NCBI GenBank assembly: GCA_950097015.1
Contig: CATNEN010000001.1
Span: 1,984,001 to 2,048,000 of the forward strand
From: Macrostomum hystrix
Lineage: Eukaryota > Animalia > Platyhelminthes
Length of the DNA: 64,000 nt
Reading direction: 5' to 3'
In this document: in pieces, positions 48,001 through 64,000 of the stretch
Position numbering within the stretch: position 1 is the first letter of the stretch
How the letters are laid out: every line of letters begins with the position of its first letter
The notes under the pieces: generated by a model
What the model was told of the DNA's origin: nothing
The model's input: only the letters and a program-made list of their open reading frames with translations
Database searches by the model: none
Made by a program: the position numbers and the translations under genes

Positions 48001-48922
48001 GTATCAAGAACAGTAGCTCGGAATCGTTATCAAGAACAGTAGCTCGGGAATCGTATCAAGAACAGTAGCTCGGAATCGTATCAAGAACAGTAGCTCGGAA
48101 TCGTATCAAGAACAGTAGCTCGGAATCGTATCAAGAAACAGTAGCTCGGAATCGTATCAAGAACAGTAGCTCGGAATCGTATCAAGAACAGTAGCTCGGA
48201 ATCGTATCAAGAACAGTAGCTCGGAATCGTATCAAGAACAGTAGCTCGGAATCGTATCAAGAACAGTAGCTCGGAATCGTATCAAGAACAGTAGCTCGGA
48301 ATCGTATCAAGAACAGTAGCTCGGAATCGTATCAAGAACAGTAGCTGGGAATCGTATCAAACAGTAGCTGGAATCGTATCAAGAACAGTAGCTCGGAATC
48401 GTATCAAGAACAGTAGCTCGGAATCGTATCAAGAACAGTAGCTCGGAATCGTATCAAGAACAGTAGCTCGGAATCGTATCAAGAACAGTAGCTCGGAATC
48501 GTATCAAGAACAGTAGCTCGGAATCGTATCAAGAACAGTAGCTCGGAATCGTATCAAGAACAGTAGCTCGGAATCGTATCAGACCCGGAATTACAGTAGC
48601 TGGGAATCGTATCAAGAACAGTAGCTCGGAATCGTATCAAGACAGTAGCTCGGAATCGTATCAAGAACAGTAGCTCGGAATCGTATCAAGAACAGTAGCT
48701 CGGAATCGTATCAAGAACAGTAGCTCGGAATCGTATCAAGAACAGTAGCTGGGAATCGTATCAAGAACAGTAGCTCGGAATCGTATCAAGAACAGTAGCT
48801 CGGAATCGTATCAAGAACAGTAGCTGGGAATCGTATCAAGAACAGTAGCTGGGAATCGTATCAAGAACAGTAGCTCGGAATCGTATCAAGAACAGTAGCT
48901 CGGAATCGTTTCAAAGACAGTA
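45035..48922. repeat. Minisatellite, 25-bp unit CAGTAGCTCGGAATCGTATCAAGAA (~155 copies)
   Basis: Largest array in the window; perfect core with scattered 1-nt indels on the flanks. Confidence 0.98.
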
Positions 48923-49058
48923 GAGTCTGTCAGAGTGAGTCTGTCAGAGTGAGTCTGTCAGAGTGAGTCTGTCAGAGTGAGTCTGTCAGAGTGAGTCTGT
49001 CAGAGTGAGTCTGTCAGAGTGAGTCTGTCAGAGTGAGTCTGTCAGAGTGAGTCTGTCA
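48923..49058. repeat. 14-bp tandem repeat GAGTGAGTCTGTCA (~10 copies) derived from a splice-donor region
   Basis: Matches the exon 2 donor region CAGA|GTGAGTCTGT of copies B and D. Confidence 0.88.
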
Positions 49059-49125: not shown

Positions 49126-50198
49126 ACTCGAGCATCGGGAGGAGCGGCTCCGTCCAGCTGACTGTCGTGAACGTGACCGGCTGCTACCGCTTGGAGGCCT
49201 GGGGCGCGGCAGGTGGGGCCAACAGCTTCAACAACAAGGTCGGCGGCAGAGGCGCCTACTCAGCCGGCAGCTTCAATTTCACCGGAGGCACCCGGCTGTC
49301 GATCGTTGTCGGCCAGGCCGGAGGCAACGTCGCTTCTGATCGCGCCGGAGCTGGTGGCGGCGGTGGCAGCTTCGTGCTTCTGGCGGCTGGTGGTGGTGGC
49401 GGCGCTTCGTCTTGGGCTTCAGGTGAAAAAGTTCTTGGAAATGGAATGGAAGTGTCTGATGCCAGAAAAAAAGCGTACTAGCAAAAATATCCCACAGATG
49501 AAAACGGACACAATAACCTTTTTCTAAAGTACTTTCTTCATATAAATTTAATAAAATACTAAGCGGAGCGTTTCAGATCGTAACAAAAGCAAGTATTTTG
49601 AGGGACAGATTACTTAATGTTGTAATAAGCCACTAGTAAGGACGAATATCCATCGATTGTAGGGAGTGAGTGGCAGATGTACACACCTGTGTGTGCTCAG
49701 GAGTCAGCTGAATGGGCAGAATTGCCTCCTCACTGGCTGCGGGTCTAGTGTCACCAAATGATGTGCAGCCCTCCTGCAATTATTATTATTATTATCGATC
49801 TCTTGCAAAAGTTTCCTGGCGCGCACTTCAGGCAGCGCCGGACAGGCGGGACCCGACGGCAGAAAATCAATCGGTCAAAGGGGGACAAAGGGGGATCCGG
49901 CGTTGGCTGGCGAAGTGGAGCCGCCAGTCGCACTGATGTCAGCTTCGGCGACGGTGGAAGCGGCCTCATCAACTTCTGGCTCGGTGGCAGCGGCGGCAGC
50001 GTCAACGGCACCAGCGGTCTAAGCAGCGACGACGGCGGCGGCGATGGCGGATTCGGCGGCGGCGGCGGAGGCGGTCGAGCAAACGGCGCCGCTGGCGCTG
50101 GCGACGGCTCTTACCACGCTAACGACGGCGGCAACGCGGGCGCCGAACACGGAGAGATTTTACTCCACCTTCTCCATTTCTCTAAGGCCGATTGTTAA
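49126..50198 (+). pseudogene. PAN-ALK/LTK Gly-rich family copy A (5'-truncated, internally deleted)
   Basis: Exon 3 49126-49422 with a 24-nt in-frame deletion versus copy B; degenerate exon 4 ~49830-50198; exons 1-2 absent; SINE fragment in the intron. Confidence 0.75.
49672..49795 (+). mobile_element. SINE family 1, 3' fragment with (ATT)n tail
   Basis: Matches the 3' half of the 38128 copy. Confidence 0.7.
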
Positions 50199-50463
50199 CT
50201 GAGTGGAGACTGAGGGGTCAACCAGAAGGAGAAGTTTACCTTGAATAACAGTACTTGAGAAAGAATAGAACACCCTTAGCTTAAATTTACTTAAATTCAC
50301 TTGTTAATAGTTACTCGTATTTTCTTATCAAAATAATTTTTTGTAGGAGTAATAATAAACAGTATTTCTGTCTAAATGAAAAAAATACGGATCATGATGG
50401 ACGATTATTTTTTCGTAAGTCTAATACATATATATTTACCGAATTGTCTCGTATTTTTTATAT

Positions 50464-50700
50464 GGGTCGTAGCCTAGTGGTAAGAGCGACGGACTTTCGA
50501 CTTGAATGTCGCGGGTTCGATTCGCGTCTCCACAGGAACAATTTGTGCAGTTAACTCTGCATTGCTTCAGTTCACCCGGCTGTTAAATTGGTGTCAGCAT
50601 CAGCTGGGGAAAATGAGGGTGGGTGTGACGTCCCCCAGTCCATGGACTGATCGGCCGTACGTAGCCTTCAGATCCCATCAACTCAGGCTCGGATGAAATA
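50464..50700 (+). mobile_element. tRNA-derived SINE, family 2
   Basis: A box TAGCCTAGTGG, B box GGTTCGATTC, core CAGTTCACCCGGCTGTTAAATTGGT. Confidence 0.7.
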
Positions 50701-51142
50701 TAGTATAACAAAAAAATTGATTTCTTTATATTATATGACATATACCAAGATTTCGTGTAACTTAAGGATAATCAGTAATCTTCATATTTGTATAGTTTTA
50801 AGCCTATAAAGTGTAACAAAGTTCACATTAAATGTAAACCACGTTAACTAACTGCGATGCATTATTAAAAAAAAATTACTTCTGATTAATTAGAATTCAA
50901 TTAGCTAAAGCTGCATAGTTCTCAATTTATCATATGCAAAAGCACATATCATTTTACGATGCTTTAATAAAAAAATGGATTAAGTTTGGGAGAAAAATTT
51001 TATGCTTAACTGCATGACTGTATGACTGTATGAGGAGAGTCAAATGGTCAGAATTGGTCAATAATGTTTGAAAATTTACAGAAATACCGCTAAATAAGAG
51101 AATGCAAGCAGCAGTTAGGCTGTCGACAAAAACTTCAGTGGC

Positions 51143-51544
51143 TTAATAATAATAATAATAATAATTGACACTAGACCCAAGGGCCAGTGCAGGTGTTGTG
51201 TGTCAGGCACACTAGCAGGTGGGGACTGCACACCTAATGTACTCCCCGGCTCTCTCGGACACCGGTTGACAGCCGCGTGTCAGCAATGGAATTTATTTTT
51301 CTAAACATATCGGCAGCATCCAAACCCCACAGAATTGCCGCACAGAACTGCTTTATTCCACGCCAGCCGGAATTATTATTACCCGACGAAATGTCGGTAC
51401 TCATTTGCAGCTGAGTAGACTGTGTGCACATCAGGGCAAAGCAGCTTGCCAAAGGCTGCACGAATAGTTCTAGACTAGGTCGGGAGTCGAACCCAGGACC
51501 ATCTGATCCAGAGTCCGACACCTTACTGACTGAGCTATCCGCCC
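51143..51544 (-). mobile_element. tRNA-derived SINE, family 3
   Basis: GGGCGGATAGCTCAGTCAGTAAG..GGTTCGACTCCC head, core CAGTCTACTCAGCTGCAAATGAGTACC, (TTA)n tail. Confidence 0.75.
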
Positions 51545-51728
51545 AGATAACCCAGATAGTGGCTTAATGGTATTAAATTTCACGAACGTTAGCTCATTGC
51601 GCAGTATTATTAAATAAAAATACCCGGATATAGTTGGCAAACTGCATGAAAACGACAGCTCAGCTAAATCATTGCGGTATCGTTTTGACAAGAAAAACAA
51701 AACAGAAGCCAAGGGCAATACACAACCA

Positions 51729-53371
51729 ATGTCCTTCGTCATGAAAACGCAAGTTTGCAAAGCTATGCTGACTTTGCTACTTCTGCTTGACATCAATGGT
51801 AGATAATTTTCTTCCAATCTCCTTTTTTTAAAACCTAGCGTTAAAAAATTGCTTAAAACATGACTTAAAAAGTAACAAATTAAAATTTCCACTCTGTTTG
51901 TTTTCTGCCTATTAGAATCTGTTGAGGACAGTTCATCACATGAGTTTCTTCCCTCATTCAACATCAACAGCGTTGTCGACTGTCTGCGCTGACGTCAACA
52001 GCGGCCAAATCTTTGTCGAGCAGTCGGTCTCGCTCCGCCTGAACGACTCCGTGAGCAGCCGCGTCTTAAACGCCTCGGCCGATAACTTTCGCTCGAAGTT
52101 TGAGTGCCTGACCACATGCCAACGCACCGACTGCGCTGCCGCTAGAGCACTGAGGACATCGGTCAGCGACTGGGTCTGCCAGCTGCTGCTCATCAACGAC
52201 GCCTCGGTGGCTCCGGGACCGCCAGGGAGTCATGCCGAGCGGCTGTTTGAGCTCGGAGACGGCTGGAGACTGTGGCTGCCACACGAACTCGACCAGCTGC
52301 TGCGGTCTCGACGATTCACCAATGGTTCCATCGGATTTCAGAGTGAGTCTGTACAGTGAGACTGTTACAATAAGGCTGGCAGAGTGAATTGTGAGTCTAT
52401 GCTCACAAAAGTTCTGTCTATCTACACTACAGACTCGAGCATCAGGAGGAGCGGCTCCGTCCAGCTGACTGTCGTGAACGTGACAGGCTGCTACCGCTTG
52501 GAGGCCTGGGGCGCGGCAGGCGGGGCCAACACCTTCAACAACAAGGTCGGCGGCAGAGGTGCCTACTCAGCCGGCAGCTTCAATCTCACCGGAGGCACCC
52601 GGCTGTCGATCGTTGTCGGCCAGGCCGGAGGCGACGTCACAGCGGGCGGTGCCGGAGCTGGTGGCGGCGGTGGCAGCTTCGTGTACCGGACGAACGACAA
52701 TGCGCTTCTCCTTGCGGCTGGTGGCGGCGGCGGAGCTTCTTCTTGGGCTGCGGGTGAGTCGAGAATCCGATTTAAATTCCATTTGCCGAATAATGTTTAA
52801 CAATGTTTTAAGTCGAAAAGAAGTTTTTAAATTGATGGCGTCATTACTGACTTATAGTAGCAATTTGGAATTTTGAAATCGCACAACTTAAGGCCGACCC
52901 GGGCTGTCTGGCACCAGCGGCGGCGACTCTTTTGGTGATTTGAGCGCCAACACGGGCTTCGGAGGCAGCAACGGCCAGCCGGGGAACAACGGTGCTGGGT
53001 CGACTAGCGATTTCTACGGTGGCTGCGGCGCTGGCTGGCTCGGCAGGGCTGCGAATCGAACCAACGTCAGTCACGGCGACTCAGGCGCTGATCGCATCGA
53101 AAACTGGATCGGCGGTTTTGCGGGCTCCGCTGGAAACGGCGGTGACGGTGGATTCGGCGGCGGAGGCGGAGGCGGCAACGCCAACGGAGCTGCAGGAGGC
53201 GGCGGAGGCTTCAGCGGCGGAGGTGCCGGTGTGGGTGGTTACCACGCCGGTGGCGGCGGCGGCTCCTTCTGCAGCGGCGGCAGCTGCACCGGAGCAAACG
53301 CCGGCAACTCCGCCGACATTCAAGGCCGAGTAGTTTTCCGCATTCTAACCGAGACTGATGCCAACTGCTGA
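51729..53371 (+). CDS. Secreted PAN/Apple-like + ALK/LTK-type Gly-rich (TG) protein, copy B (intact, 413 aa)
   Basis: Exons 51729-51798, 51971-52342, 52433-52753, 52893-53371 (1242 nt, all phase 1). Signal peptide-like MLTLLLLLDINALSTVCA; PAN-like C-x3-C-x4-C-x13-CQL; TG motifs TGCYRLEAWGAAGG, GGRGA..FNL..G..LSIVVGQAGG, GGGGGSFV, LLAAGGGGG, GGFGGGGG, GGGGGFSGG, GGGGSF, GRVVF; stop with no TM helix. Confidence 0.85.
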
Positions 53372-54104
53372 ACCAATCGATATGCCAAACATTGACTAGA
53401 GTAAAAGTACTTCGTTAAAAATCAGATGCACAAAAATACGTACAACAGTCCTTGCCTCCCTAAAGCCTTACTGATCCAGCAGCACAGAGTGTTAGTGTTT
53501 TTGTTAATTTGTCTATCACAAAACCATGTTCCCAATTTTTACGACTGACTTTTCATAACGATAAAATTATTCTTAAGTGGTCTTGGGTATTGTGCTCGAT
53601 CATAAAATATTTGCAAGGACTTCAGAGTTATCACACCTCAGTATATAATTACATTGATAATAATCAGCAATCAGCAATAAAACACGAGCTCCTTGAAACA
53701 CAACAATGGCGTCGCGACAGCTCGTACTAGACCTGATATCGGCCGAAAAAGCAAGATCGTGGCTTATCGATTCAAAGAATTTGCATTTGCGAAAGGATGA
53801 AAGGGCGTCTTTTTAGGCAAACAAGTTTCGGACAACTTTCTGGCATGCGGTCGGCTCCATCTGGTACCACTTGTAACACGAGGCCTTGTAACACGAGTAA
53901 AAATCAAGCCCCGTGAGGCGGTGCTCCAACTTATGCAAGTTGGAATTCATCAATTAGCGATGTACATAGAGAGAGAGCGAACGTAAATTAGAAGCGATAT
54001 AATTATTCAGCTAATTCGTCATCGTTCACGGTAACAGTTCGACAGTACAGTTTTCACTCGTAATTACTCGTGATCGTGATTCCGAATGTAAACTGCACAC
54101 AAAA

Positions 54105-56547
54105 TCAGCATGCAGACGGCAGCAGTTGCAGCACAACTTGTCCATGCTGACTGTCGCTGTTGCCACCAGTGACGGCAGTACAGTCGACGCCGTCACAGAA
54201 GGAGCCGCCTCCGCCGCCAGCGTGATTGCGTCCAATTCCAGCGCCGCCGCCGCTCTATCCTCCGCCGGCACCTGCGGCACCCCCTCCGCCTCCGCTGCCG
54301 CCGCTGCCACCGCCACCGCCAAAGCCGCCATCTCCAGTGTTGCCACTTCCAGCGATGCCACCCGTCCAGCCTTGATTTGGGCCTCCGCCTCGGTCACCGT
54401 CGTTGGCACTGCGCCTCGAGTTCCCGGCCTGACCCAGCCAGCCAGCACCGCAGCCTCCGTGATTGCTGCTCGGGGGTGTGTCGCTTGGTTTGTTAAATCC
54501 CGGACTACCATTCGTCCCACCAAAGCCAGCATTAGAGCCAGGATTAGTTGAATCCGATCCGTTCACACTCGACTGGCCGGGAAAGCCTAGGAAATCAGGT
54601 CAGTGAACAGTTTGCAAATTCAAATAGGCATTGGCCAGTAGCTAAAGGCAGTGGTGCCAATGTTACACAGGTGCCTGGTTATGGGTATTCTGTTCGATTG
54701 TAGCTTACATGTCAATCTCGGCAACATACTGGGAATGTTTCAGTCAAGCGAGTACTACTCCAACTCCTACTGCTTATAGTAACATTTGCAGGAGGGCTTT
54801 GAACACAGGCATTCTATTTGATAACATTTGAACCTCAGCCTGAGGCAGACAATACCACAGACTCCAAGCGACACCCGGGACCGAAAATTCCTTAAGAAAA
54901 CGGAAGTGGACACTCATAAACCAAAGTAGAAAGCGATATAAGTCACATTTAATTGTGAATGGTACAGTGAGTACTGCCAGGGTTGTATTTGTGAATTAGC
55001 TTTTATAATTCTCGCGTTTTATAGTGTTGATGCGTATACATCAAGCGCTAAGGTCCCTGAGCTCGATTCCGCAGCCGTTTGCCCTTGAGGGCAAACCACC
55101 AAGGCACAGTGAGAGTGTGCAATACCTGACGATGAGAAAGTCAGGGAAGATGTACACACCTGTGTGAGTGACTGCGTACATTATCTATGTGCATGTGTGT
55201 TTAGGAGTCAGCTGGCTACTGGGAAAATTCGTCTCTTCGCTGGCTGCATCTAATATCACCGAATAATGTACCTTTGCGAGCAGCCCTCAAAAAGCAGTCT
55301 GAAAAATACTTTGTACGAGCTCGGGGACGCTCTAGTTTACAATTAATGCCAGCTTTGTTAGAAAAACCGACCTGAGAGGGAGAATGACGCCCCTCCTCCG
55401 CCTCCCGCCGCTACCAGTGGGCGATTGGCACCGTTGACATACACGAAGCTGCCACCTCCTCCGCCGCCGCCGTTGCTGCCATCCGTGGCTGGTCCTCCGG
55501 CCTGGCCGACAAGAATCGACAGCTGGACGCCGGCAGTCAGGTTGAAGCGGCCCGACATGAAGGCTCCGCTGCCGCCAGTTGTGCCGGTGACGCTGTTAGA
55601 GCCGCCCGCAGCGCCCCAGGCGTTGATGCTGTAGCAGCCGGTGAAGTTGATTGACAGCTGCTGGATGGAGCCCAGCCTGCCCGAGTTGGAATCTGAGAGA
55701 CAGTTCCAGCGATTGTGTGAATTCAGTTTACAGGCTTTAAGCTGAGGACTGATAATAATTTTATTTTCAAACGAAACTGCGTCCAAAGTTTATTAAGTTA
55801 GCTTAGAAAATTCTCTGCTAATAGGCGGTATAAAAGTACGTCGTAGTGCTTTTTTATAATCAGTGTACAATTTAGGAAGCAGCACATGTTTGAGAATGCT
55901 CCTTGTGAAATCAGGGGACAACAGTGAACGCGATTCTACCGTAAAAAACATAAATGCTGTGAAAAATGTAATACAAAACTTAACAATTTAATACTCAAGG
56001 CTCACTGTTAAACTTGTAGAGGAGCATTCTGCTCAGCAGCACTTCCTGGAAGTTCCACAGCTTCCACACCTTAGCTCCGGGCTCGACGCCGATCGTTCTG
56101 GTCACGTGACTGGCATTCGACCTCCGCGTGCCGTTGGACTCGTCGTTCAAGAAGACCAGCTGGCAGACACCGGCGCTGTCGATCACGCTGACGGCTGCGC
56201 AGTCTCTCTCGGAGCACAGGTTCAGGCAGCCGAGCTCCTTGCTCCAGGCGGTCTCGTTGATGACATCAGAGCTGACAGCCGTGCTGATGATCAGCGGGCT
56301 GGGAGCGGCGTGCTCGACGAAGGTTGCAGCGTTGCAGAGCAGAGCACTGCTAACTAAGAATTTGAGATGGTCTTGTCTGTTCAATTCGTGCAACTGAGCA
56401 GCATGTTTCTGATATTGTTCAATTTTCATGCCCAGTGCCTTAATAGATTAAGCAGCGATCATTTCATTTACTTAAGCAGTAGTAAATAATCATCTGAAAA
56501 CGGTTACCTGAAGTTAGAACTTGCAGTAGTTCGCCAATGAATCTCAT
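54105..56547 (-). pseudogene. PAN-TG family copy C (divergent subtype) with a single in-frame TAG
   Basis: Exons 56547-56508, 56353-56006, 55692-55372, 54586-54105; TAG at 54257-54255 where copy B has Phe; frame stays open and homologous to TGA at 54107-54105. Confidence 0.75.
55049..55290 (+). mobile_element. SINE family 1, deleted copy in copy C intron 3
   Basis: Shares CCCTGAGCTCGATTCCGC and AAGGCACAGTGAGAGTGT..GATGAGAAAGTCAGGG blocks. Confidence 0.7.
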
Positions 56548-57776
56548 ATCAAGTCGAGTTTTTGTGACGTTATTGCTAAGTTTTTGTTTTTTGTTCTATT
56601 TGTTTAACTTTTGCCTTGGTTTTGGCTGTCTCAAACGGCGAAACTCAGGTCTCAGGTAGAAGCCATCGGAAGCTAATTGGCTCTCCTATATAGTCTACAG
56701 GAAGCGCTGATGAATAATTATTCTCCATGTGAACTAGCAGCAACTGCCTTTACCAATCGGCTTTGCCAATTAAGCCGCAATCGTCACTGCTGAACGACTT
56801 GCGTGCTGAATTCAGCGAGGCCAGCTTCCACAGAGCCTCATTATTTCTTTTAAGTATTTTAGAAGCAGAAGACATAATGTGGAGCACTGGTAAGCCTTCA
56901 AATTAGTCTGTCAGGTAGAAATGCGTTTCTGAGAAAGGCTCGGACTTTAGTTCATGCTTTTTGGATCTATTCCGATTGACGCAAATGTTAAGCCCACTTT
57001 TAGTATTTTGTTTGAGAAACCGATGAAAAATTTACTAGCAAAGCCTGTTGCATTGTACAGTTTCTCGCCATTTGCCATTTGCTGCTCACAAACCTTGTAC
57101 CGTTAGTAGCTATTCCAGAGTTTGTTATAAAGAGCCATTGTAACTCCGACTTTAGTTAGCTCAGATTTGGGGTCAATTTCCGAAAACAGTTGCTTCCCTG
57201 TCTCTTTCTCGCGTTCTGCTGCATTAGTGTCTTAGGCTGTAATCGACGATGAATTCGACTGAAAACGGAACAGCACAACATTTTTAGGAATTTTCGTGCA
57301 CATAAACGACTTTTTTATTTCCTTTTTTTATCTTTTCTTTATGCCTTTGGGAGTCAGTATAAGCTATAAATATAAATATACAAGTTTCCTGAGCTCGATT
57401 CCACCGCGAGGCCAAATTCATGGTCTTGGGGGCTCGGCGAAACTTTCCCGAAACGTTTCTGAAATTATCATTTGTAGTTATTATGGTTTCATAAATTTTC
57501 TCATCTTGTTAGCTGTGCCGCAGAGCGCATAAGGCAAACAGGCCTAAACTCGCAAAACTTTCCAATTGCTGGTTGAAGGCTTTTGTTCTCAGATCTTGAA
57601 ATAAAAAACTTCAGCTTCCGTCTGAAAAAGTTCTTGCTGGGCCTTAAAGACATTGGGACAAGCCACTTAAAAGCAGGCACAAAAGACTGAAATTCTGGCA
57701 TCTGTCGCTTCTAAAAGAAGAAAAAAGTGCAGCAACGATATTAGCAGACTGTTAGAGCACGGGAAGGACAATTGCC

Positions 57777-59405
57777 ATGATGACAGAGTCATTCAAAATT
57801 CTGCTAAGCTACAATGCTGGTGAGTAAATATTTATTCATTTGGATTAACAACAATTTTCTTAAGACTGTCGATTGAAAAAAGTGTTCGGAAAGCGTCATA
57901 AATTTATGCCTTATGGAGGCGTCACATTCATGAAGTTCCGCCACTGTGTTCAGGCGCATGTGCCAATCTGATTCTGGCCCACATTCGCCCAGTGTTCATG
58001 GATGTCTCTGCTGACGTCAACAGCGGCCGAATCTTCTTCGAGCAGTCTTCCGCATTGCGCCTGAACGACTCCGTGAGCAGCCGCGTAGTAAACGCGTCAA
58101 TCGCCTCGCTGAGGGCCGATGTAGAGTGCCAGAGCGCCTGTTTACGCATCGACTGTGGCGCCACGCGAGCTCTCAGGACGTCGACGAGCGACTGGGTCTG
58201 CCAGCTGCTGCTCATCAACGACGCCTCGGTGGCTCCGGGACCGCCAGGGAGTCATGCCAGCGGCTGTTTGAGCTCGGAGACGGCTGGAGACTGTGGCTGC
58301 CACACGACCTCGACCAGCTGCTGCGGTCCCGACGATTCACCAATGGTTCCATCGGATTTCAGAGTGAGTCTGTACAGTGAGACTGTCAGAGTAAGGCTGT
58401 CGCAGTGAGTTGTGAGTCTATGTGAAAAATATAGGTTCAATCGTCGCTGTAGACTCGAGCATCGGGAGGAGCGGCTCCGTCCAGCTGACTGTCGTGAATG
58501 TGACCGGCTGCTACCGCTTGGAGGCCTGCGGCGCGGCAGGCGGGGCCAACACCTTCAACAACAAGGTCGGCGGCAGAGGTGCCTACTCAGCCGGCAGCTT
58601 CAATCTCACCGGAGGCACCCGGCTGTCGATCGTTGTCGGCCAGGCCGGAGGCGACGTCACAGCGGGCGGTGCCGGAGCTGGTGGCGGCGGTGGCAGCTTC
58701 GTGTACCGGACGAACGACAATGCGCTTCTCCTTGCGGCTGGTGGCGGCGGCGGAGCTTCTTCTTGGGCTGCGGGTGAGTGAAAAATCTCCGTTGATTGTT
58801 TAAATTTAATTTGCATTGTAAAAGAACTTTCAAAAACAATGATAAAAGTTGAATAAAAAATTGTTTTGATGGCGTCTTTACTGACTTGAAGTATCAATTT
58901 TAAATCTCTACCTCACAAAATTTCAGGCCGACCCGGGCTGTCTGGCACGAGAGGTAGCCACTCCTTCGGGCAAGAAAGCGCCAACACGGGCTTCGGAGGC
59001 AGCAACGGCCAGTCGGGGAACAACGGTGCTGGGTCGACTAGCAACTTCTACGGTGGCTGCGGCGCTGGCTGGCTCGGCAGGGCAGCGAATCGAACAAACG
59101 TCGGTTACGGCGACTCAGGCGCTGATCGCATCGAAAACTGGATCGGCGGTTTTGCGGGCTCCGCTGGAAACGGCAGTGACGGTGGATTCGGCGGCGGAGG
59201 CGGAGGCGGCAACGCCAACGGAGCTGCAGGAGGCGGCGGAGGCTTCAGCGGCGGAGGTGCCGGTGTGGGTGGTTACCACGCCGGTGGCGGCGGTGGCTCC
59301 TTCTGCAGCGGCGGCAGCTGCACCGGAGCAAACGCCGGCAACTCCGCCGACATCCAAGGCCGAGTAGTTTTTCGCATTCTGACCGAGACTGATGCCAATT
59401 GCTGA
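57777..59405 (+). pseudogene. PAN-TG family copy D (frameshifted)
   Basis: Exons 57777-57819, 57993-58363, 58453-58773, 58927-59405; 1-nt deletion after 58258 (GCC-AG vs GCC-GAG in B), 15-nt deletion in the signal-peptide core versus copy E, EAW>EAC. Confidence 0.8.
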
Positions 59406-60497
59406 GCTAGCTGCTTCGGCTCCGTAGCCGACTACCGGACTTCCTTTGACCACGAAGTTGTAGTTCGAACTTCAGCCTAGGAAATAACTGTAGTCAAGCA
59501 AGACACGAAACAGTCCATTGCAACAGTTAAAACTGCAAATGAACTTGTACTTTGCTATGTGAAATTACTTTAACTGCGCCAAAGGCTGTTCATTTGGCCC
59601 AACTTGGTTTGGTTTAAAGGCGATCTCTCTGGGCGAACCAAACCCCCTACACAAGTACGATATCTGTTTCTTGCTTCAAAATATTGCTTTTAATTTTTTA
59701 TTTGCAATACCTTTTATAAGTCTGCAGATAAGAAACAAAAAAGTTTTTATTCAGCGTAAATGCAATGAAAAACCGCCACTTCAAATGACACATTATGGCA
59801 TCGCCGTCTTTCAGCCAGCCGGCTCACTAAGCGGCGGGGTTTGCGAAGTCACACCACCTTTTCGCACCTCCCTAGTCTCCTATCCCGCTCTCGCGTTGTT
59901 TGCTTTCGGATATAAATATAAAATACACGCCATACAGCCCCACTATCTTCGCTGCCATTCCATCTCTTAAACAAAAAATCCTTCCGCCTTAAGATGACAA
60001 TTTCTTCATCTCTAATGTTATCCTGCACTCGTCTTGAGTATACGAGACTTGAGAATTACGAGTATACTCTTAAGTTTAGCGAAACGCTACAGCTGTCAAT
60101 TATGTTTCATATTCCGCTTCTAATTGGCATGAGCTCTCAAACTGACAATTCAAATCTGACTTGCACTTGAAATTTTTTTTGCGAAAAAACTTCTGTCGAT
60201 CGCGTTTGAAATTCGCTACTCAACATCGTTCGGCGTACTATGTGTCTTAGCTTGAGCAAGAATTAAAGTCAAACTTCAAACTACCATATAATAATAACTT
60301 ATATCTAGCATATAAATAGCATAAATAATGAGGACTGATGGTAATTTCAAATGCCATAAAAGGACCAAAACCCAGAACAGTCGCCAGTCCAGGGCCGCAG
60401 TCCCGTCTCGTTCGCACAGCCTCCGTAAAGCCCCCTGAAGCTCAATATCACAGGGACCTCAGAGCAGTCTGCTTGGCCTTTCAGGGCACGGTTGCAC

Positions 60498-60984
60498 GGG
60501 GACGTTCTAGTTTACAATAATGCCAGCATTGTTAGAAAAAAACCGACCTGAGCGGGAGAATGACGCCCCTCCTCCGCCTCCCGCCGCTACCAGTGGGCGA
60601 TTGGCACCGTTGACATACACGAAGCTGCCACCTCCTCCGCCGCCGCCGCTGCTGCTTAGAAAATTCCTTTCTAATATGCGGTATAAAAGTTCGTCGTAGT
60701 GCTTTTTTATAATCAGTGTACAATTTAGGAAGCAGCACATGTTTGAGAATGCTCCTTGTGAAATCAGGGGACAACAGTGAACACGATTCTACCGTAAAAA
60801 GCATAAATGCTGTGAAAAAACTCAATAATTTAATACTGAAGGCTTACTTTTAAACTTGTAGAGGAGCATTCTGCTCAGCAACACTTCCTGGAAGTTCCAC
60901 AGCTTCCACACCTTAGCTCCGGGCTCGACACCGACCGTTCTGGTCACGTGACTGGCATTCGACCTCCGCGTGCCGTTGGACTCG
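60498..60984 (-). pseudogene. PAN-TG family copy F (deleted remnant of C subtype)
   Basis: Colinear with 55325-55475 and 55800-56142, with an internal deletion. Confidence 0.8.
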
Positions 60985-61742
60985 ACTTGGAAGCGTTGGT
61001 ACGAGCATTACCTAGCAGTAAAACGAAGATTTGCCGGCTGCCAGTTTCCATGTTTTCTGGGATCTTTTTGATGAGTAGCCCTTGGCGACAGGTAGTTTTC
61101 TACCTGTTGAAGAGTGAAGAAATTCAAGAAACGGGAGCTGAAATGCTCTCGTTAAGGAAATTTTTCAAGCCCCGCAAGCCGTAGTGGATCTTCTACAGTT
61201 AGGAAGAAACACGTTTGTGTTGAGTATAGAGTTACATTGAGAATATTCGCTTGACAACTCCACTTCTTTAGTGTTGAATAATTTTTTGCGGCGTCTGTGA
61301 GTCTTTTGTTTCTTGTTTACGAAAGCACAGTCTTTTATCAATATTACTTTATTAATCATTATTCTTTATTTTCTTGATCAACTGTTCACAAACGGGTGCT
61401 TCATATACTAATTAAAATGTCGCTTAAAAGACATTGTAAAAATATTTATAATAATAATAAAACAATGGACTAAACCTGCCTCAATCGGGACAGACGTGCA
61501 ACCTACGGCACAGCCGCAGTAATGCCACGTAGAGCAATGAATATTCTAAGATAGTTTAGGCGGTACTTAGCTTGTTGTCTTGACATTTGACAAGTTTTTT
61601 TCAGGTCAAGAGTAATTACGAGTGAAAACTGTACTGTCGAACTGTTACCGTGAACGATGAAGAATTAGCTGAATAATTATATCGCTTCTAATTTACGTAC
61701 GCTCTCTCTCTCTATGCACATCGCTAATTGATGAATTCCAAC

Positions 61743-62377
61743 TTACATAATTATAGCGAGCACTGCCTCACGGGGCAGATGGTACCAGATGGAGCTGAAT
61801 CGTCGAGACCGCAGCAGCTGGTCGAGGTCGTGTGGCAGCCACAGTCTGCAGCCGTCTCCGAGCTCAAACAGCCGCACGGCATGACTCCCTGGCGGTCCCG
61901 GAGCCACCGAGGCGTCGTTGATGAGCAGCAGCTGGCAGACCCAGTCGCTGACCGATGTCCTCAGTGCTCTCGCGGCAGCGCAGTCGGTGCGTTGGCATGT
62001 GGTCAGGCACTCAAACTCCAAGCGAAAGTTATCGGCCGAGGCGTTTAAGACGCGGCTGCTCACGGAGTCGTTCAGGCGCAATGCGGAAGACTGCTCGAAG
62101 AAGATTCGGCCGCTGTTTACGTCAGCAGCGACAGCCGTGAACACTGGGCGAATGTGGGCCAGAATCAGATTGGCACATGCGCCTGAACACAGTGGCGGAA
62201 CTTCATGAATGTGACGCCTCCATAAGGCATAAATTTATGACGCCTTCCGAACACTTTATTTTTCAATCGTAGGTCTTAAGAAAATTGTTGTTAATCCAAA
62301 TGAATAAATATTTACTCACCAGCATTGCTGAGTAGAAGGAAGCAGCTTAGCAGAATTTCGAATGATTCGGTCATCAT
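61743..62377 (-). CDS. PAN-TG family copy E, truncated to signal peptide + PAN domain (~152 aa)
   Basis: Exon 1 62377-62320 (MMTESFEILLSCFLLLSNA), exon 2 62143-61743 open; after SRRF the sequence switches to a copy of the B-C intergenic region (53853 onward) and stops at TAA. Confidence 0.6.
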
Positions 62378-63959
62378 GGCAGTTGTCCTTCCCGTGCTCT
62401 AACAGTCTGCTGATATCGTTGCTGCACTTGTTTCTTCTTTTAGAAACGACAGATGCCAGAATTTCAGTCTTTTGTGCCTGCTTTTAAGTGGCTTGTCCCA
62501 ATGTCTTTAAGGCCCAGCAAGAACTTTTTGAGACGGAAGCTGAAGTTTTTTATTTCAAGATCTGAGAACAAAAGCCTTCAACCAGCAATCGGAAAGTTTT
62601 GCGAGTTTAGGCCTGTTTGCCTTACGCGCTCTGCGGCACAGCTAACAAGATGAGAAAATTTATGAAACCAAGATGGCGATTCAGGTATGAGGAAAGCATT
62701 TCCACCGTCTTCTGCACCCAGTAACAGCGGAAGATCGCCTTTTTACCTTGGCCAGTGAAAATCTAGTTTTGAATTAAAATTGAGCCACTATGTGCAATAA
62801 ACCTAAGACTTGGCTCCTTCTAAAATTGAAAGCTGAGATGCACGATTTTCCTCCGGCATGCAACCTAAAAGCAATCTTTTAGTTTTCTAGCTTCCATTCT
62901 AACGACGAAAATGGCCAGGTAAAAAAGTCCAGAATTACTAATTAAGCGCCTAAAGAATTAGTAAGGCGTTTAATTATGCAGTGGTCCTACAAGAAGGGAA
63001 TTATGCACTATTCTCCAGAATAACTCGAACTGATAATTTCAGAAACGTTTCGGGAAAGTTACGCCGAGCCACCAAGACCATGAATTTGGCCTCGCGGTGG
63101 AATCGAGCTCAGTAAACTTGGTGCGAGAAGCAAACCAATAAAAATATAAATATGCAGATATATTTATATTTATAGATTTTACTGACTCCCAAAGACATAA
63201 AGAAAAGACATGAAAATAGGAATAATAAGTCATTTATGTGCACGAAAATGCCTAAAAATGATGTGCTGTTCCGTTTTCAGTCGAATTCATCGTCGATTAC
63301 AGCATAAGACACTAATGCAGCAGAACCTGAGAAAGAGACAGGGGAGCAACTCTTTTTAGAAATTGACCCCAAATCTGAGCTAACTAGAGTCGGAGTTACA
63401 ATGGCTCTTTATAAAAAACTCTAGAATAGCTACTAACGGTACAAGGTTTGTGAGCAGCAAATGGCAATAGGCTCACGAGAAACTGTACCTCGCAACAGGC
63501 TTGGCTAGTAAATTTTTCAAATTTGCGTCAATCGGAATAGATCCAAAAAGCGTGAACTAAAGTCCAAGCCTTTCTCAGAAACGCATTTCTACCTGACAGA
63601 CTAATTTGAAGGCTTTCCAGTGCTCCACATTATGTCTTCTGCTTCTAAAATACTTGAAAGAAATAATGAGGCTCTGTGGAAGCTGGCCTCGCTGAATTCA
63701 GCACGCAAGTCGTTAAGCAGTGACGATTGCGGCTTAATTAGCAAAGCCGATTGGTAAAGGCAGTTGCTGCTAGTTCACATGGTGAATAATTATTCATCAG
63801 CGCTTCCTGTAGACTATATAGGAGAGCCAATTAGCTTCCGATGGCTTCTACCTGAGACCTGAGTTTCGCCGTTTGAGACAGCGAAAACCAAGGCAAAAGT
63901 TAAACAAATTGAACAACAAACAAAAACTTAGCAATAACGTCACAAAAACTCGACTTGAT

Positions 63960-64000
63960 ATGAGATTCATTGGTGAACTACTGCAAGTTCTAACTTCAGG
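63960..64000 (+). CDS. PAN-TG family copy G (C subtype), exon 1 only; runs off window
   Basis: ATGAGATTCATTGGTGAACTACTGCAAGTTCTAACTTCAG|g = MRFIGELLQVLTS, same as copy C exon 1. Confidence 0.7.
   Translation, partial: MRFIGELLQVLTS

What the first reader, a model, noticed from the sequence alone, without database searches (positions are those of the whole stretch)
49126..64000. Expanded cluster of secreted PAN + ALK/LTK glycine-rich ectodomain proteins with no TM or kinase
Seen: at least seven copies or fragments (A+, B+, C-, D+, F-, E-, G+) sharing a 4-exon, all-phase-1 structure. Intact copy B encodes signal peptide, 4-Cys PAN/Apple-like domain and a Gly-rich region, then stops. Established: motifs TGxYxLxAxGAxGG, FxLxxGxxLxIxVGQxG, GGGGGxFV, LLAAGGGG, GGFGGGG and GGGGG(Y/F)SGG characterise the TNF-like/polyglycine-II domain of ALK/LTK receptor kinases, their ligand-binding module. 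Inference: a soluble family in birth-and-death evolution, which could be decoy receptors or ligand carriers, recognition proteins, or mucus/adhesive components built on a polyGly-II bundle.
Basis: partly seen in the sequence, partly recalled or inferred. Interest (0 to 1): 0.82.

Follow-up and report, generated by a model that had tools for sequence, protein, structure and literature searches.

The report
Secreted kinase-less ALK-type glycine-rich gene array
This stretch of the flatworm Macrostomum hystrix starts the genome's largest tandem array of genes for secreted proteins that join a small PAN/apple head to the ligand-binding module of the ALK/LTK cancer receptors, with no membrane anchor or kinase; one of the seven copies here is intact, and no paper on the family turned up in the held library.

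Summary
Window 49126-64000 holds seven copies or fragments of one four-exon gene with all introns in phase 1.

- **Copies:** only B (51741-53371, 422 codons) is intact. C has an in-frame TAG, D a 1-bp frameshift, and A, E and F are truncated. G runs off the window and looks intact beyond it.
- **Glycine-rich domain:** exon 3 passes Pfam PF12810 (42 bits against a cut-off of 24.5). Among solved structures it hits only ALK/LTK. A natural single-exon paralog folds into the ALK/LTK glycine-rich domain (Foldseek E 3e-12).
- **PAN head:** exon 2 folds as a PAN/apple module (Z 6.6) with four invariant cysteines. Copy B itself has no Pfam PAN match.
- **No receptor parts:** B ends at a stop codon facing a convergent neighbour. 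It has no TM-like stretch, and no kinase motif occurs in the window.
- **Genome:** it is the published M. hystrix assembly (exact size match). It has at least 109 such GRD exons, and this array is the largest.
- **Evolution:** copies evolve under relaxed purifying selection (dN/dS 0.2-0.6) with mosaic exchange between them.
- **Other animals:** corals carry the same PAN+GRD architecture.

Function is inferred: soluble binding or recognition proteins. The scan had already found this family in other windows of the same genome.

The parts
45054..49058 (.). 25-bp satellite (155 copies, 45054-48923) followed by a 14-bp minisatellite (48923-49058). Together they replace the 5' half of copy A.
   Evidence: Tandem Repeats Finder. 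The 14-bp unit GAGTCTGTCAGAGT matches the exon 2/intron 2 donor region of copies B and D. Copy A aligns to B from 49028 onwards.
49126..50198 (+). Copy A, a 5'-truncated pseudogene. Exon 3 is 49126-49422, with an in-frame internal deletion. The decayed exon 4 remnant is about 49890-50198.
   Evidence: tblastn gives 90% identity to B exon 3 and only 53% over 38 aa of exon 4. Sequence read. PF12810-type exon hit at C1:2033176.
51741..51798 (+). Copy B exon 1, the signal-peptide exon (MKTQVCKAMLTLLLLLDIN). The donor is in phase 1.
   Evidence: The hydrophobic core AMLTLLLLL has a Kyte-Doolittle 9-residue mean of 2.87.
51932..52342 (+). Copy B exon 2, the PAN/apple-like domain. It has four invariant Cys spaced C-x3-C-x4-C-x14-C and three N-glycosylation sequons.
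   Evidence: Alignment of 25 paralogs. AF2 model with pLDDT 81. The top structural matches are all PAN/apple modules, with Z up to 6.6. PAN_1 is sub-threshold in 14 of 25 paralogs.
52433..52753 (+). Copy B exon 3, the N-terminal half of the ALK/LTK-type glycine-rich domain (TNF-like strands plus the first Gly runs).
   Evidence: PF12810 E 1.1e-10, 42.3 bits against a cut-off of 24.5. phmmer against PDB hits only LTK (9.4e-5) and ALK (about 1e-3).
52893..53371 (+). Copy B exon 4, the C-terminal half of the GRD (GGFGGGG, GGGGGFSGG, GGGGGSFC), followed by the stop codon at 53369-53371.
   Evidence: 48% identity over 118 aa, E 3e-6, to residues 324-441 of coral P0071, which lie almost wholly inside that protein's Pfam GRD match (176-430). 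No Pfam or PDB sequence hit on its own. AATAAA at 53676.
54105..56547 (-). Copy C, a pseudogene or truncated gene. Exon 1 is 56547-56508, exon 2 56353-56006, exon 3 55692-55372 and exon 4 54586-54105. There is an in-frame TAG at 54257-54255.
   Evidence: Sequence read. PF12810 on exon 3 at 2.7e-8. The intact sister copy G has a Tyr codon at the TAG position.
57777..59405 (+). Copy D, a pseudogene. Exon 1 is 57777-57819 (shortened), exon 2 57954-58363 with a 1-bp deletion near 58259, exon 3 58453-58773 and exon 4 58927-59405.
   Evidence: It is a mosaic relative to B. A 35-codon PAN-core patch (58082-58186) has saturated dS.
60494..60984 (-). Fragment F, a partial direct copy of C (3' part of exon 2, part of intron 2 and the end of exon 3), with about 320 bp missing.
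   Evidence: blastn gives 95% and 92% identity to 55319-55479 and 55801-56142.
61796..62377 (-). Fragment E. Exon 1 is 62377-62320 (MMTESFEILLSCFLLLSNA). Exon 2 runs from 62182 to about 61796 and is then joined to a copy of the 3' flank of a C-type gene (61606-61776).
   Evidence: 93% identity to B exon 2 and 91% to D upstream through exon 2, both inverted. Sequence read.
63960..63999 (+). Copy G exon 1 (C-type). The gene continues beyond the window end and looks intact there.
   Evidence: Inverted duplication of 56507-57486 at 64000-63015. Exons 2-4 are open in L054, ending GQVVLQLLPSAC-stop.

Best explanation
**What it is.** The region is the start of the largest tandem array, in the Macrostomum hystrix genome, of a family of about 100 or more genes. 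Each gene encodes a roughly 420-residue secreted protein. The protein has a signal peptide, one PAN/apple module, and a complete ALK/LTK-type glycine-rich domain (a TNF-like beta-sandwich carrying a polyglycine-II lattice). It then stops, with no EGF-like module, membrane anchor or kinase. This part is shown.

**How the array evolves.** It turns over by direct and inverted segmental duplication, deletion, point inactivation and patchy sequence exchange between copies. In this window one gene (B) is intact, five copies are wrecks, and G is intact just outside.

**How the proteins most likely work (inferred).** They act as soluble, glycosylated extracellular binding proteins and cannot signal on their own. 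The conserved glycine lattice and beta-strands would serve as a rigid scaffold. The variable loops between the Gly runs, together with the faster-evolving PAN head, would be the binding surfaces. This resembles how the same TNF-like plus glycine-rich module serves as the receptor-binding tip of phage tail fibres and as the ligand-binding module of ALK/LTK. The most likely setting is surface or mucus recognition of foreign or self glycans and proteins, comparable to other expanded families of secreted recognition proteins.
For: **Identity**
- PF12810 matches exon 3 of B, C and D above the cut-off.
- The PDB sequence search with B exon 3 returns only LTK and ALK.
- B exon 4 aligns to the GRD C-terminal half of coral P0071.
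- The complete single-exon GRD of paralog L016 was modelled at pLDDT 82.5, pTM 0.87. It gives 21 Foldseek hits at E<=1e-3, all ALK/LTK GRD (7lrz 3e-12, LTK 7nx1 TM 0.64, C. elegans 7lir 3.8e-6). The next hit is a cyanophage fibre at E 0.18.
- The exon 2 model's best matches are HGF N domain, plasminogen PAN, HAI-1 MANEC, LAPP and kallikrein/FXI apple, with Z 6.6 to 4.6. It has four invariant Cys.

**Secreted, no receptor parts**
- Exon 1 has a hydrophobic core. There are seven N-glycosylation sequons.
- The maximum Kyte-Doolittle 19-residue mean in exons 2-4 is 0.91. No HRDxxxxN motif occurs in any frame of the window.
- Copy C is convergent, about 730 bp downstream of B's stop.
- No scored kinase exon lies within 60 kb of any GRD exon, apart from an unrelated ACK/TNK-like gene.

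**Family size**
- At least 109 GRD exon hits and 108 PAN-type exon hits genome-wide.
- 63 of the 109 are paired within 3 kb. This array has 14 hits and the next largest has 5.

**Selection**
- dN/dS is 0.16-0.66 among close paralogs and higher in PAN, at 0.42-0.63.
- Gly runs and strands are conserved while the loops between them vary.

**Turnover**
-.

**Same architecture elsewhere**
- M. lignano 'Apple domain-containing protein' entries.
- Coral PAN_1+GRD proteins of 416-497 aa.

**Analogy**
Against: - No expression, localisation or binding data exist for any member. I found no transcript-derived protein of M. hystrix and no paper on the family.
- The conserved-scaffold, variable-loop pattern is what most protein families show, so it does not single out recognition.
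- Whole-exon dN/dS is below 1 in all but one very recent pair. There is therefore no direct sign of diversifying selection.
- The complete GRD fold was tested on a paralog about 45-50% identical to copy B, not on B itself.
- PAN support for copy B rests on a predicted model with middling Z scores and no Pfam hit.
- Signal peptide and TM calls are by hydropathy only.
Confidence: 0.55

Rival explanations
1. The proteins are structural or material components of a secretion (mucus, rhabdites, adhesive, egg shell). The glycine-rich lattice would give stiffness or self-assembly, and many gene copies would supply bulk product.
For: Exon 3 is 25% Gly and exon 4 is 35% Gly. Copy number is very high and the genes sit in tandem arrays. 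PAN modules occur in extracellular matrices (established knowledge, e.g. PMC4970718 listed). Coral relatives are auto-named 'loricrin-like'.
Against: The Gly runs are not open-ended low-complexity repeats. They are fixed motifs of a compact globular fold with conserved Cys, sequons and strand cores. Copies differ by 40-60% in sequence, which is unusual for bulk-material gene arrays. There is no repeat expansion inside genes.
Confidence: 0.2
2. The proteins are rapidly evolving reproductive proteins (seminal fluid or egg coat) shaped by sexual conflict in a hypodermically inseminating, selfing hermaphrodite.
For: dN/dS is elevated at 0.4-0.6, there are many pseudogenes, and arrays turn over fast. 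Macrostomum is a model for such proteins (my own knowledge, not tested here).
Against: No expression evidence exists. The same architecture is present in corals. About 100 copies is far more than typical seminal-fluid families.
Confidence: 0.1
3. The proteins are soluble decoy receptors or ligand carriers that trap the ligand of an ALK-type receptor kinase and so tune its signalling.
For: The GRD is the ligand-binding module of ALK/LTK, and the fold match is specific.
Against: No ALKAL-family (PF15129) match was found in the genome at E<=0.01 (a weak test for a short, intron-split gene). No GRD exon lies next to a kinase exon, and the one near-neighbour is an ACK/TNK-like gene separated by an ING gene. 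More than 100 divergent copies with frequent loss is not how decoys of a single cytokine behave.
Confidence: 0.07
4. These are ordinary ALK-like receptor genes whose TM and kinase exons were missed.
For: UniProt auto-names some M. lignano relatives 'receptor protein-tyrosine kinase'.
Against: The stop codon falls at the same place in B, D, G, other paralogs and coral homologs. The downstream neighbour is convergent. There is no TM-like stretch and no kinase motif in any frame of the 64-kb window, and no scored PF07714 hit within 3 Mb on this contig. The automatic name follows from PF12810 alone.
Confidence: 0.02
5. The family is largely a graveyard of decaying duplicates with no present function at this locus.
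For: Five of the seven copies in the window are broken.
Against: Copy B and the adjoining G are intact. Exons are far better conserved than introns. dN/dS is below 1 in nearly all close pairs. Most hits genome-wide have open frames.
Confidence: 0.05

Closest known systems
Ligand-binding glycine-rich domain of ALK/LTK receptor tyrosine kinases (Pfam PF12810; PDB 7lrz, 7n00, 7nwz, 7nx0, 7nx1, 7lir)
   Same: The sequence motifs are the same and the Pfam match is above the cut-off. The predicted fold is the same: a TNF-like sandwich plus a polyglycine-II lattice. Both are extracellular.
   Different: The flatworm proteins have no EGF-like module, TM helix or kinase, and no MAM or LDLa modules. They carry a PAN head instead. 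There are over 100 fast-evolving copies rather than one or two conserved receptors. The ligand is unknown.
Coral PAN+GRD proteins (Porites harrisoni ABFA07_017308 = P0071; Stylophora pistillata AWC38_SpisGene21703 = P0090; Pocillopora P0135) and Acropora millepora 'leukocyte tyrosine kinase receptor-like' (P0036)
   Same: The domain order is the same: an N-terminal PAN_1 followed by a complete GRD, with the chain ending a few residues after the last strand. Size is similar (393-497 aa). B exon 4 is 48% identical to P0071 residues 324-441.
   Different: They come from a different phylum. The coral PAN passes Pfam's cut-off whereas copy B's does not. Corals also attach the GRD to EGF repeats or to Ig plus collagen stalks. 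The copy number in corals was not determined.
Macrostomum lignano UniProt entries 'Apple domain-containing protein' and 'receptor protein-tyrosine kinase' (A0A1I8H2N5 = P0001, A0A1I8GD19 = P0003, A0A1I8JJH8 = P0008)
   Same: They belong to the same family in a sister species, at 35-45% identity to M. hystrix paralogs, and have PAN followed by the GRD N-terminal half.
   Different: They are fragmentary automatic gene models of 190-305 aa. They are named by domain only, and no study of them turned up in the held library.
Phage tail-fibre tips with TNF-like plus glycine-rich domains (cyanophage Pam3 gp24, PDB 7ypx; Salmonella phage S16 gp38)
   Same: A polyglycine lattice acts as a rigid scaffold whose distal loops vary and bind a target. 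Pam3 gp24 resembles the C. elegans ALK GRD (PMC9608196). It is the first non-ALK hit of the GRD model, though not a significant one (E 0.18).
   Different: The phage proteins are trimeric fibres docked to a baseplate and need a chaperone. There is no detectable sequence relationship to the flatworm proteins. This is a functional analogy, not membership.

Membership tests
ALK_LTK_GRD (Pfam PF12810) | Match to the family HMM above the curated gathering score | tested here: met
   B exon 3 scores 42.3 bits, E 1.1e-10, against a cut-off of 24.5, covering profile positions 7-114 of 243. C exon 3 scores 34.6 bits and D exon 3 scores 39.2 bits.
ALK_LTK_GRD (Pfam PF12810) | C-terminal half of the domain present (later Gly runs and closing strands) | tested here: met
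   B exon 4 alone gives no Pfam or PDB sequence hit. It does align at 48% identity over 118 aa, E 3e-6, to P0071 residues 324-441, which lie almost wholly inside that protein's PF12810 match of 176-430. It carries GGFGGGG, GGGGGFSGG and GGGGGSFC.
ALK_LTK_GRD (Pfam PF12810) | Fold: TNF-like beta-sandwich bearing a polyglycine-II lattice, matching solved ALK/LTK ectodomains | tested here: met
   This was tested on the natural single-exon GRD of paralog L016, not on copy B, because the joined exons of B were not built. The model has pLDDT 82.5 and pTM 0.87. All 21 Foldseek hits at E<=1e-3 are ALK/LTK, the best at 3.2e-12, with TM up to 0.64.
ALK/LTK receptor tyrosine kinases | Single-pass transmembrane helix after the ectodomain | tested here: not met
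   The maximum Kyte-Doolittle 19-residue mean in B exons 2-4 is 0.91. The stop comes 12 codons after the last predicted strand.
ALK/LTK receptor tyrosine kinases | Cytoplasmic tyrosine kinase domain | tested here: not met
   No HRDxxxxN motif in any of the six frames of the window. No scored PF07714 hit on contig C1 nearer than about 3 Mb. The downstream gene is convergent.
ALK/LTK receptor tyrosine kinases | EGF-like module after the GRD (and MAM/LDLa modules in ALK) | tested here: not met
   Pfam finds nothing but PF12810 in the exons of B, C and D. The chain ends right after the GRD.
ALK/LTK receptor tyrosine kinases | Binding of an ALKAL/Jeb/HEN-1-type ligand | not testable with these tools
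   The only result is a negative genome scan for PF15129. That scan is weak, because nothing rang in its control genomes either.
PAN/apple domain (Pfam PF00024 clan) | Match to a PAN family HMM above the gathering score | tested here: not met
   B exon 2 has no Pfam family at E<=1. PAN_1 is the commonest family among the 25 paralog exons (14 members), but only sub-threshold, with a best E of 5.5e-4.
PAN/apple domain (Pfam PF00024 clan) | Conserved cysteine core of four to six Cys around a central helix | tested here: met
   Four invariant Cys (C58, C62, C67, C82 of the exon 2 translation) occur in all 25 paralogs. hhalign places them on the Cys core of the coral PAN_1 domain, although weakly at E 0.064.
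PAN/apple domain (Pfam PF00024 clan) | PAN fold: a helix packed on a curved antiparallel sheet | tested here: met
   The model has pLDDT 81. In VIA-align, 17 of the top 20 matches are PAN/apple-type modules: HGF N domain Z 6.6, rmsd 3.4 over 80 residues; plasminogen Z 6.3; HAI-1 MANEC Z 5.6. The Z scores are middling and Foldseek E-values are not significant, the best being 0.03.

The most novel reading that the evidence does not exclude
PAN+GRD proteins of flatworms, together with the coral proteins that place the same GRD behind PAN, EGF or Ig-collagen stalks, may form an old and overlooked class of soluble animal recognition molecules. The glycine-rich domain would act as a globular binding head, comparable to C1q/TNF or fibrinogen-related heads. 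On this reading ALK/LTK arose when such a soluble head was fused to a kinase. The flatworm expansion, diversified by patchy exchange between copies, would then be a new innate recognition repertoire.
Probability: 0.2. Interest if true: 0.78.

Novelty: new variant of a known kind. Interest (0 to 1): 0.55.

Why it matters
In the literature I could search, the ALK/LTK glycine-rich domain is treated only as the ligand-binding part of two receptor kinases of medical importance. Here the same module appears as a free, secreted protein, in over 100 fast-turning copies in a flatworm, fused to a PAN head. The same module also sits behind several different stalks in corals.

If these proteins bind targets through the loops of the glycine lattice, they would show what the module did before it was attached to a kinase. 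They would also add a new scaffold to the list of animal recognition families.

Macrostomum has in situ hybridisation and RNAi, and a transgenic sister species, so the question is directly testable. For this window alone the result is more modest. It is one more locus, although the largest array, of a family already sitting unnamed in databases and already met by this scan.

Tried and rejected
- **PDB sequence searches.** phmmer with the complete GRD of L016 and with B exon 4 gave nothing useful, probably because of the glycine bias. Only exon 3 gave ALK/LTK hits.
- **Foldseek on the exon 2 model.** It gave no significant E-value. The PAN assignment rests on VIA-align Z scores and the cysteine pattern.
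- **A suspected true ALK gene.** The best PF12810 hit (C38:10780800) has a kinase exon 14 kb downstream on the same strand. On inspection the GRD gene stops, an ING-type PHD gene follows, and the kinase belongs to an ACK/TNK-like gene with SAM, SH3 and UBA parts.
- **Donor of D's divergent patch.** I searched the genome for the source of the 35-codon PAN-core patch and found only the patch itself.
- **Transcript-derived proteins.** I spent the third homolog search on B exon 4, hoping for M. hystrix proteins that cross the exon 3/4 junction. It returned only 5 hits, none from M. hystrix. An M. lignano gene model (P0008) does span the junction.
- **ALKAL ligands.** The PF15129 scan found no match, but nothing rang in its controls either.
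- **tRNA-like stretch upstream of B.** ARAGORN did not call a tRNA there.
- **Literature.** Seven searches found no study of kinase-less GRD proteins in flatworms or corals. The one paper citing PF12810 concerns a fungus and says the domain gives no hint of function.
- **BLASTP of B exon 4 against L016.** It failed under composition correction.
- **Steps not taken.** The large representative-protein search was not used, because the family scans had settled the identity.

Full report
**Source.** The window is G000:C1:1984001-2048000 of an assembly of 220,453,370 bases in 42 contigs, the longest being 35,345,953 bases. These three numbers are exactly those in Table 1 of the Macrostomum hystrix genome paper (PMC10468722). 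The DNA is therefore the published M. hystrix assembly. It is not human, and nothing in it suggests contamination: the genes have GT-AG introns and lie in a 27.5-Mb contig.

**Observation.** tblastn of copy B's exon translations against the window, and reading the sequence, recover all seven copies on the stated strands.

Copy B is intact. Exon 1 is 51741-51798, exon 2 51932-52342, exon 3 52433-52753 and exon 4 52893-53371. Every junction is GT-AG in phase 1, and the total is 422 codons. The other copies are as follows.
- Copy A starts at 49126 with exon 3. Its exons 1-2 are replaced by a 25-bp satellite (155 copies, 45054-48923) and a 14-bp minisatellite (48923-49058). The minisatellite unit derives from the exon 2/intron 2 donor region. 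Its exon 4 is decayed.
- Copy C (minus strand) has an in-frame TAG at 54257-54255, within the GGG(Y/F)SGG motif.
- Copy D has a 1-bp deletion near 58259 in exon 2 and a shortened signal-peptide exon.
- F is a partial direct copy of C.
- E has exons 1-2 only and is then joined to a copy of a C-type 3' flank.
- G has exon 1 at 63960-63999. Beyond the window its exons 2-4 are open, with a Tyr codon where C has TAG.

**The glycine-rich part.** I never built the joined protein of copy B for any search or fold.
- Exon 3 of B, C and D matches Pfam PF12810 (ALK/LTK glycine-rich domain) above the gathering score: 42.3, 34.6 and 39.2 bits against 24.5.
- Against all PDB sequences, B exon 3 hits only human LTK (9.4e-5) and ALK (about 1e-3).
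- B exon 4 gives no Pfam or PDB sequence hit by itself. It is, however, 48% identical over 118 residues to the C-terminal GRD half of a coral protein whose PF12810 match spans that region.
- To test the fold of a complete domain without joining exons I used a natural paralog. In L016 (C24), a two-exon gene for signal peptide, PAN and GRD, the whole GRD lies in one exon.
- The L016 model has pLDDT 82.5 and pTM 0.87. It has 21 Foldseek matches at E<=1e-3, and every one is an ALK or LTK glycine-rich domain: 7lrz at 3.2e-12, the LTK TG domain 7nx1 at TM 0.64, and C. elegans 7lir at 3.8e-6. The next match, a cyanophage fibre, has E 0.18.

**The PAN part.** Copy B's exon 2 has no Pfam match at E<=1.
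- A genome search with it finds 108 related exons.
- In an alignment of 25 of them, four Cys are invariant, spaced C-x3-C-x4-C-x14-C in copy B.
- PAN_1 is the commonest, although sub-threshold, Pfam family, matching 14 of 25 with a best E of 5.5e-4.
- The AF2 model of B exon 2 has pLDDT 81. It gives no significant Foldseek E-value.
- In an all-against-representatives structural search, the top matches are nearly all PAN/apple modules: HGF N domain Z 6.6, plasminogen Z 6.3, HAI-1 MANEC 5.6, leech antiplatelet protein 4.9, and kallikrein, FXI and MIC4 apple domains.

I accept PAN/apple as the fold, at moderate strength.

**No receptor parts.**
- B's frame ends at 53369-53371, twelve codons after the last strand. 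Paralogs and coral homologs end at the same point.
- The next gene, C, is convergent, with its stop about 730 bp away.
- Exons 2-4 have no TM-like stretch: the maximum Kyte-Doolittle 19-residue mean is 0.91.
- Exon 1 has a hydrophobic core, and the protein carries seven N-glycosylation sequons.
- No HRDxxxxN kinase motif occurs in any frame of the 64-kb window.
- Genome-wide, no scored PF07714 exon lies within 60 kb of a GRD exon, with one exception on C38. That case proved to be a separate ACK/TNK-like gene lying beyond an ING gene.
- Only 130 of 862 kinase candidates were scored, so absence of an ALK ortholog is suggested, not shown.
- A scan for ALKAL ligands (PF15129) found nothing, and this is a weak test.

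**Family and array.**
- There are at least 109 GRD exon hits and 108 B-type PAN exon hits in the genome.
- 63 of the 109 GRD exons have a B-type PAN exon within 3 kb upstream on the same strand. This is a lower bound, since two of the 'unpaired' ones I inspected (C38:10780800 and L016) do carry divergent PAN exons.
- 71 of the 109 lie on contig C1.
- The array that begins in this window (C1:2,033,176-2,112,378) has 14 listed hits, plus copy D, which the list missed. It is the largest in the genome; the next has 5.

**Turnover.** Self-comparison shows the following.
- B and D share 88.7% identity over 1.4 kb.
- The head-to-head unit from C exon 1 to D exon 2 (56507-58339) is duplicated in inverted orientation at 64000-61796, giving E and G.
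- F is a direct partial copy of C.

B and D are mosaics. Their upstream region, exon 1 and intron 1 are unrelated. The first half of exon 2 is 67% identical and the second half 96%. Exon 3 is 98.8% identical and exon 4 94.6%, yet introns 2 and 3 are only 76% and 70% identical.
- Synonymous divergence in exon 3 is 0.023, against intron distances of about 0.3. I read this as recent homogenisation of that exon (inference).
- A 35-codon patch covering the PAN helix and three of the four core Cys in D differs from B and E at saturated dS (1.5-2.0). The rest of exon 2 has dS 0.03-0.125. That patch is therefore an exchanged tract and not accumulated point change. No donor survives elsewhere in the assembly.

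**Selection.** Among close paralog pairs with dS between 0.03 and 0.8, dN/dS is as follows.
- PAN exon: 0.42-0.63.
- Exon 3: 0.16-0.69.
- Exon 4: 0.25-0.66.
- One very recent pair has about 1.3 in both GRD exons.

The family is thus under relaxed but real protein-level constraint. Column entropy shows conserved Gly runs and strand cores, with variable loops between them.

**Relatives.**
- The nearest database proteins are fragmentary M. lignano models named 'Apple domain-containing protein', 'receptor protein-tyrosine kinase' or 'PE-PGRS family protein'.
- Stony corals have full-length PAN_1+GRD proteins of 416-497 aa (Porites, Stylophora, Pocillopora). They also have GRDs behind EGF repeats or Ig plus collagen.
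- Many bacterial proteins carry the domain too.
- I found no paper on kinase-less GRD proteins of animals.
- The phage Pam3 fibre paper describes a TNF-like plus glycine-rich tip that resembles the C. elegans ALK GRD. Its conserved glycine stem carries a hypervariable receptor-binding end (PMC9608196).

**Interpretation.**
- *Shown:* a tandem array of genes and pseudogenes for secreted PAN+GRD proteins without TM or kinase, in birth-and-death turnover with mosaic exchange.
- *Inferred:* they act as soluble binding or recognition proteins, with the glycine lattice as scaffold and the loops and PAN head as binding surfaces.
- *Rivals:* a structural secretion component, reproductive proteins, ALK-ligand decoys (least supported of the three), a missed receptor (effectively excluded), or a dead family (contradicted by constraint).

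**Prior findings of the scan.** The same family had been reported from other windows of this genome (s1-846790, s1-847614, s1-332718, s1-344297). Those notes gave me the species name as a lead, which I verified independently, and a family size that my counts agree with.

This report adds:
- the exact gene models and lesions of this locus;
- the finding that this is the largest array;
- the exon-limited homogenisation and the exchanged PAN-core patch;
- per-exon dN/dS;
- the coral architectures.

Noticed in passing
window 45054-49058: A 3.9-kb satellite of a 25-bp unit (GGAATCGTATCAAGAACAGTAGCTC, 155 copies, 95% matches) abuts a perfect 14-bp minisatellite (9.7 copies). The minisatellite unit comes from the exon 2/intron 2 donor region of the PAN+GRD genes. 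Together they replace the 5' half of copy A.
   Followed up: partly
window 58082-58186 (copy D exon 2): A 35-codon patch over the PAN helix and three core Cys differs from copies B and E at saturated synonymous divergence (dS 1.5-2.0). The flanking codons are nearly identical. No donor sequence exists elsewhere in the assembly.
   Followed up: yes
window 51460-51540: A tRNA-like stretch, possibly SINE-derived, lies about 200 bp upstream of copy B's start codon. ARAGORN does not call a tRNA there.
   Followed up: partly
P0091-P0098, P0117, P0194 and others: In stony corals the GRD is the C-terminal module of several secreted architectures: PAN+GRD, EGF-CA repeats+GRD, and Ig+collagen+GRD. The last recalls the stalk-and-head proteins of the C1q/TNF type. 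Hundreds of GRD-only proteins of about 300 aa from ENA assemblies are 70-80% identical to the coral GRD, some on contigs of 0.5-2.4 Mb whose origin was not determined.
   Followed up: no
L051-L053 (G000:C38:10772000-10800000): Another PAN+GRD gene, which gives the best PF12810 hit in the genome, is followed on the same strand by an ING-type PHD-finger gene. After that comes an ACK/TNK-like non-receptor tyrosine kinase with SAM, SH3 and UBA parts and long peptide-repeat introns. This adjacency could be mistaken for an ALK-like receptor.
   Followed up: yes
L013, L018, L019 (G000:C1:4.93 Mb, 0.65 Mb, 24.3 Mb): In some paralogs the reading frame stays open from the PAN exon (in L013 from the signal peptide) through to the end of the GRD N-terminal half. 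Intron 2 is therefore either lost or stop-free and in frame there. L016 has the whole GRD in one exon. Intron content varies within the family.
   Followed up: partly
L020 (G000:C39:9489500-9493500): A long open frame made of KEGR-type tetrapeptide repeats lies next to a weak PF12810 hit. It is probably a coding-looking microsatellite.
   Followed up: no
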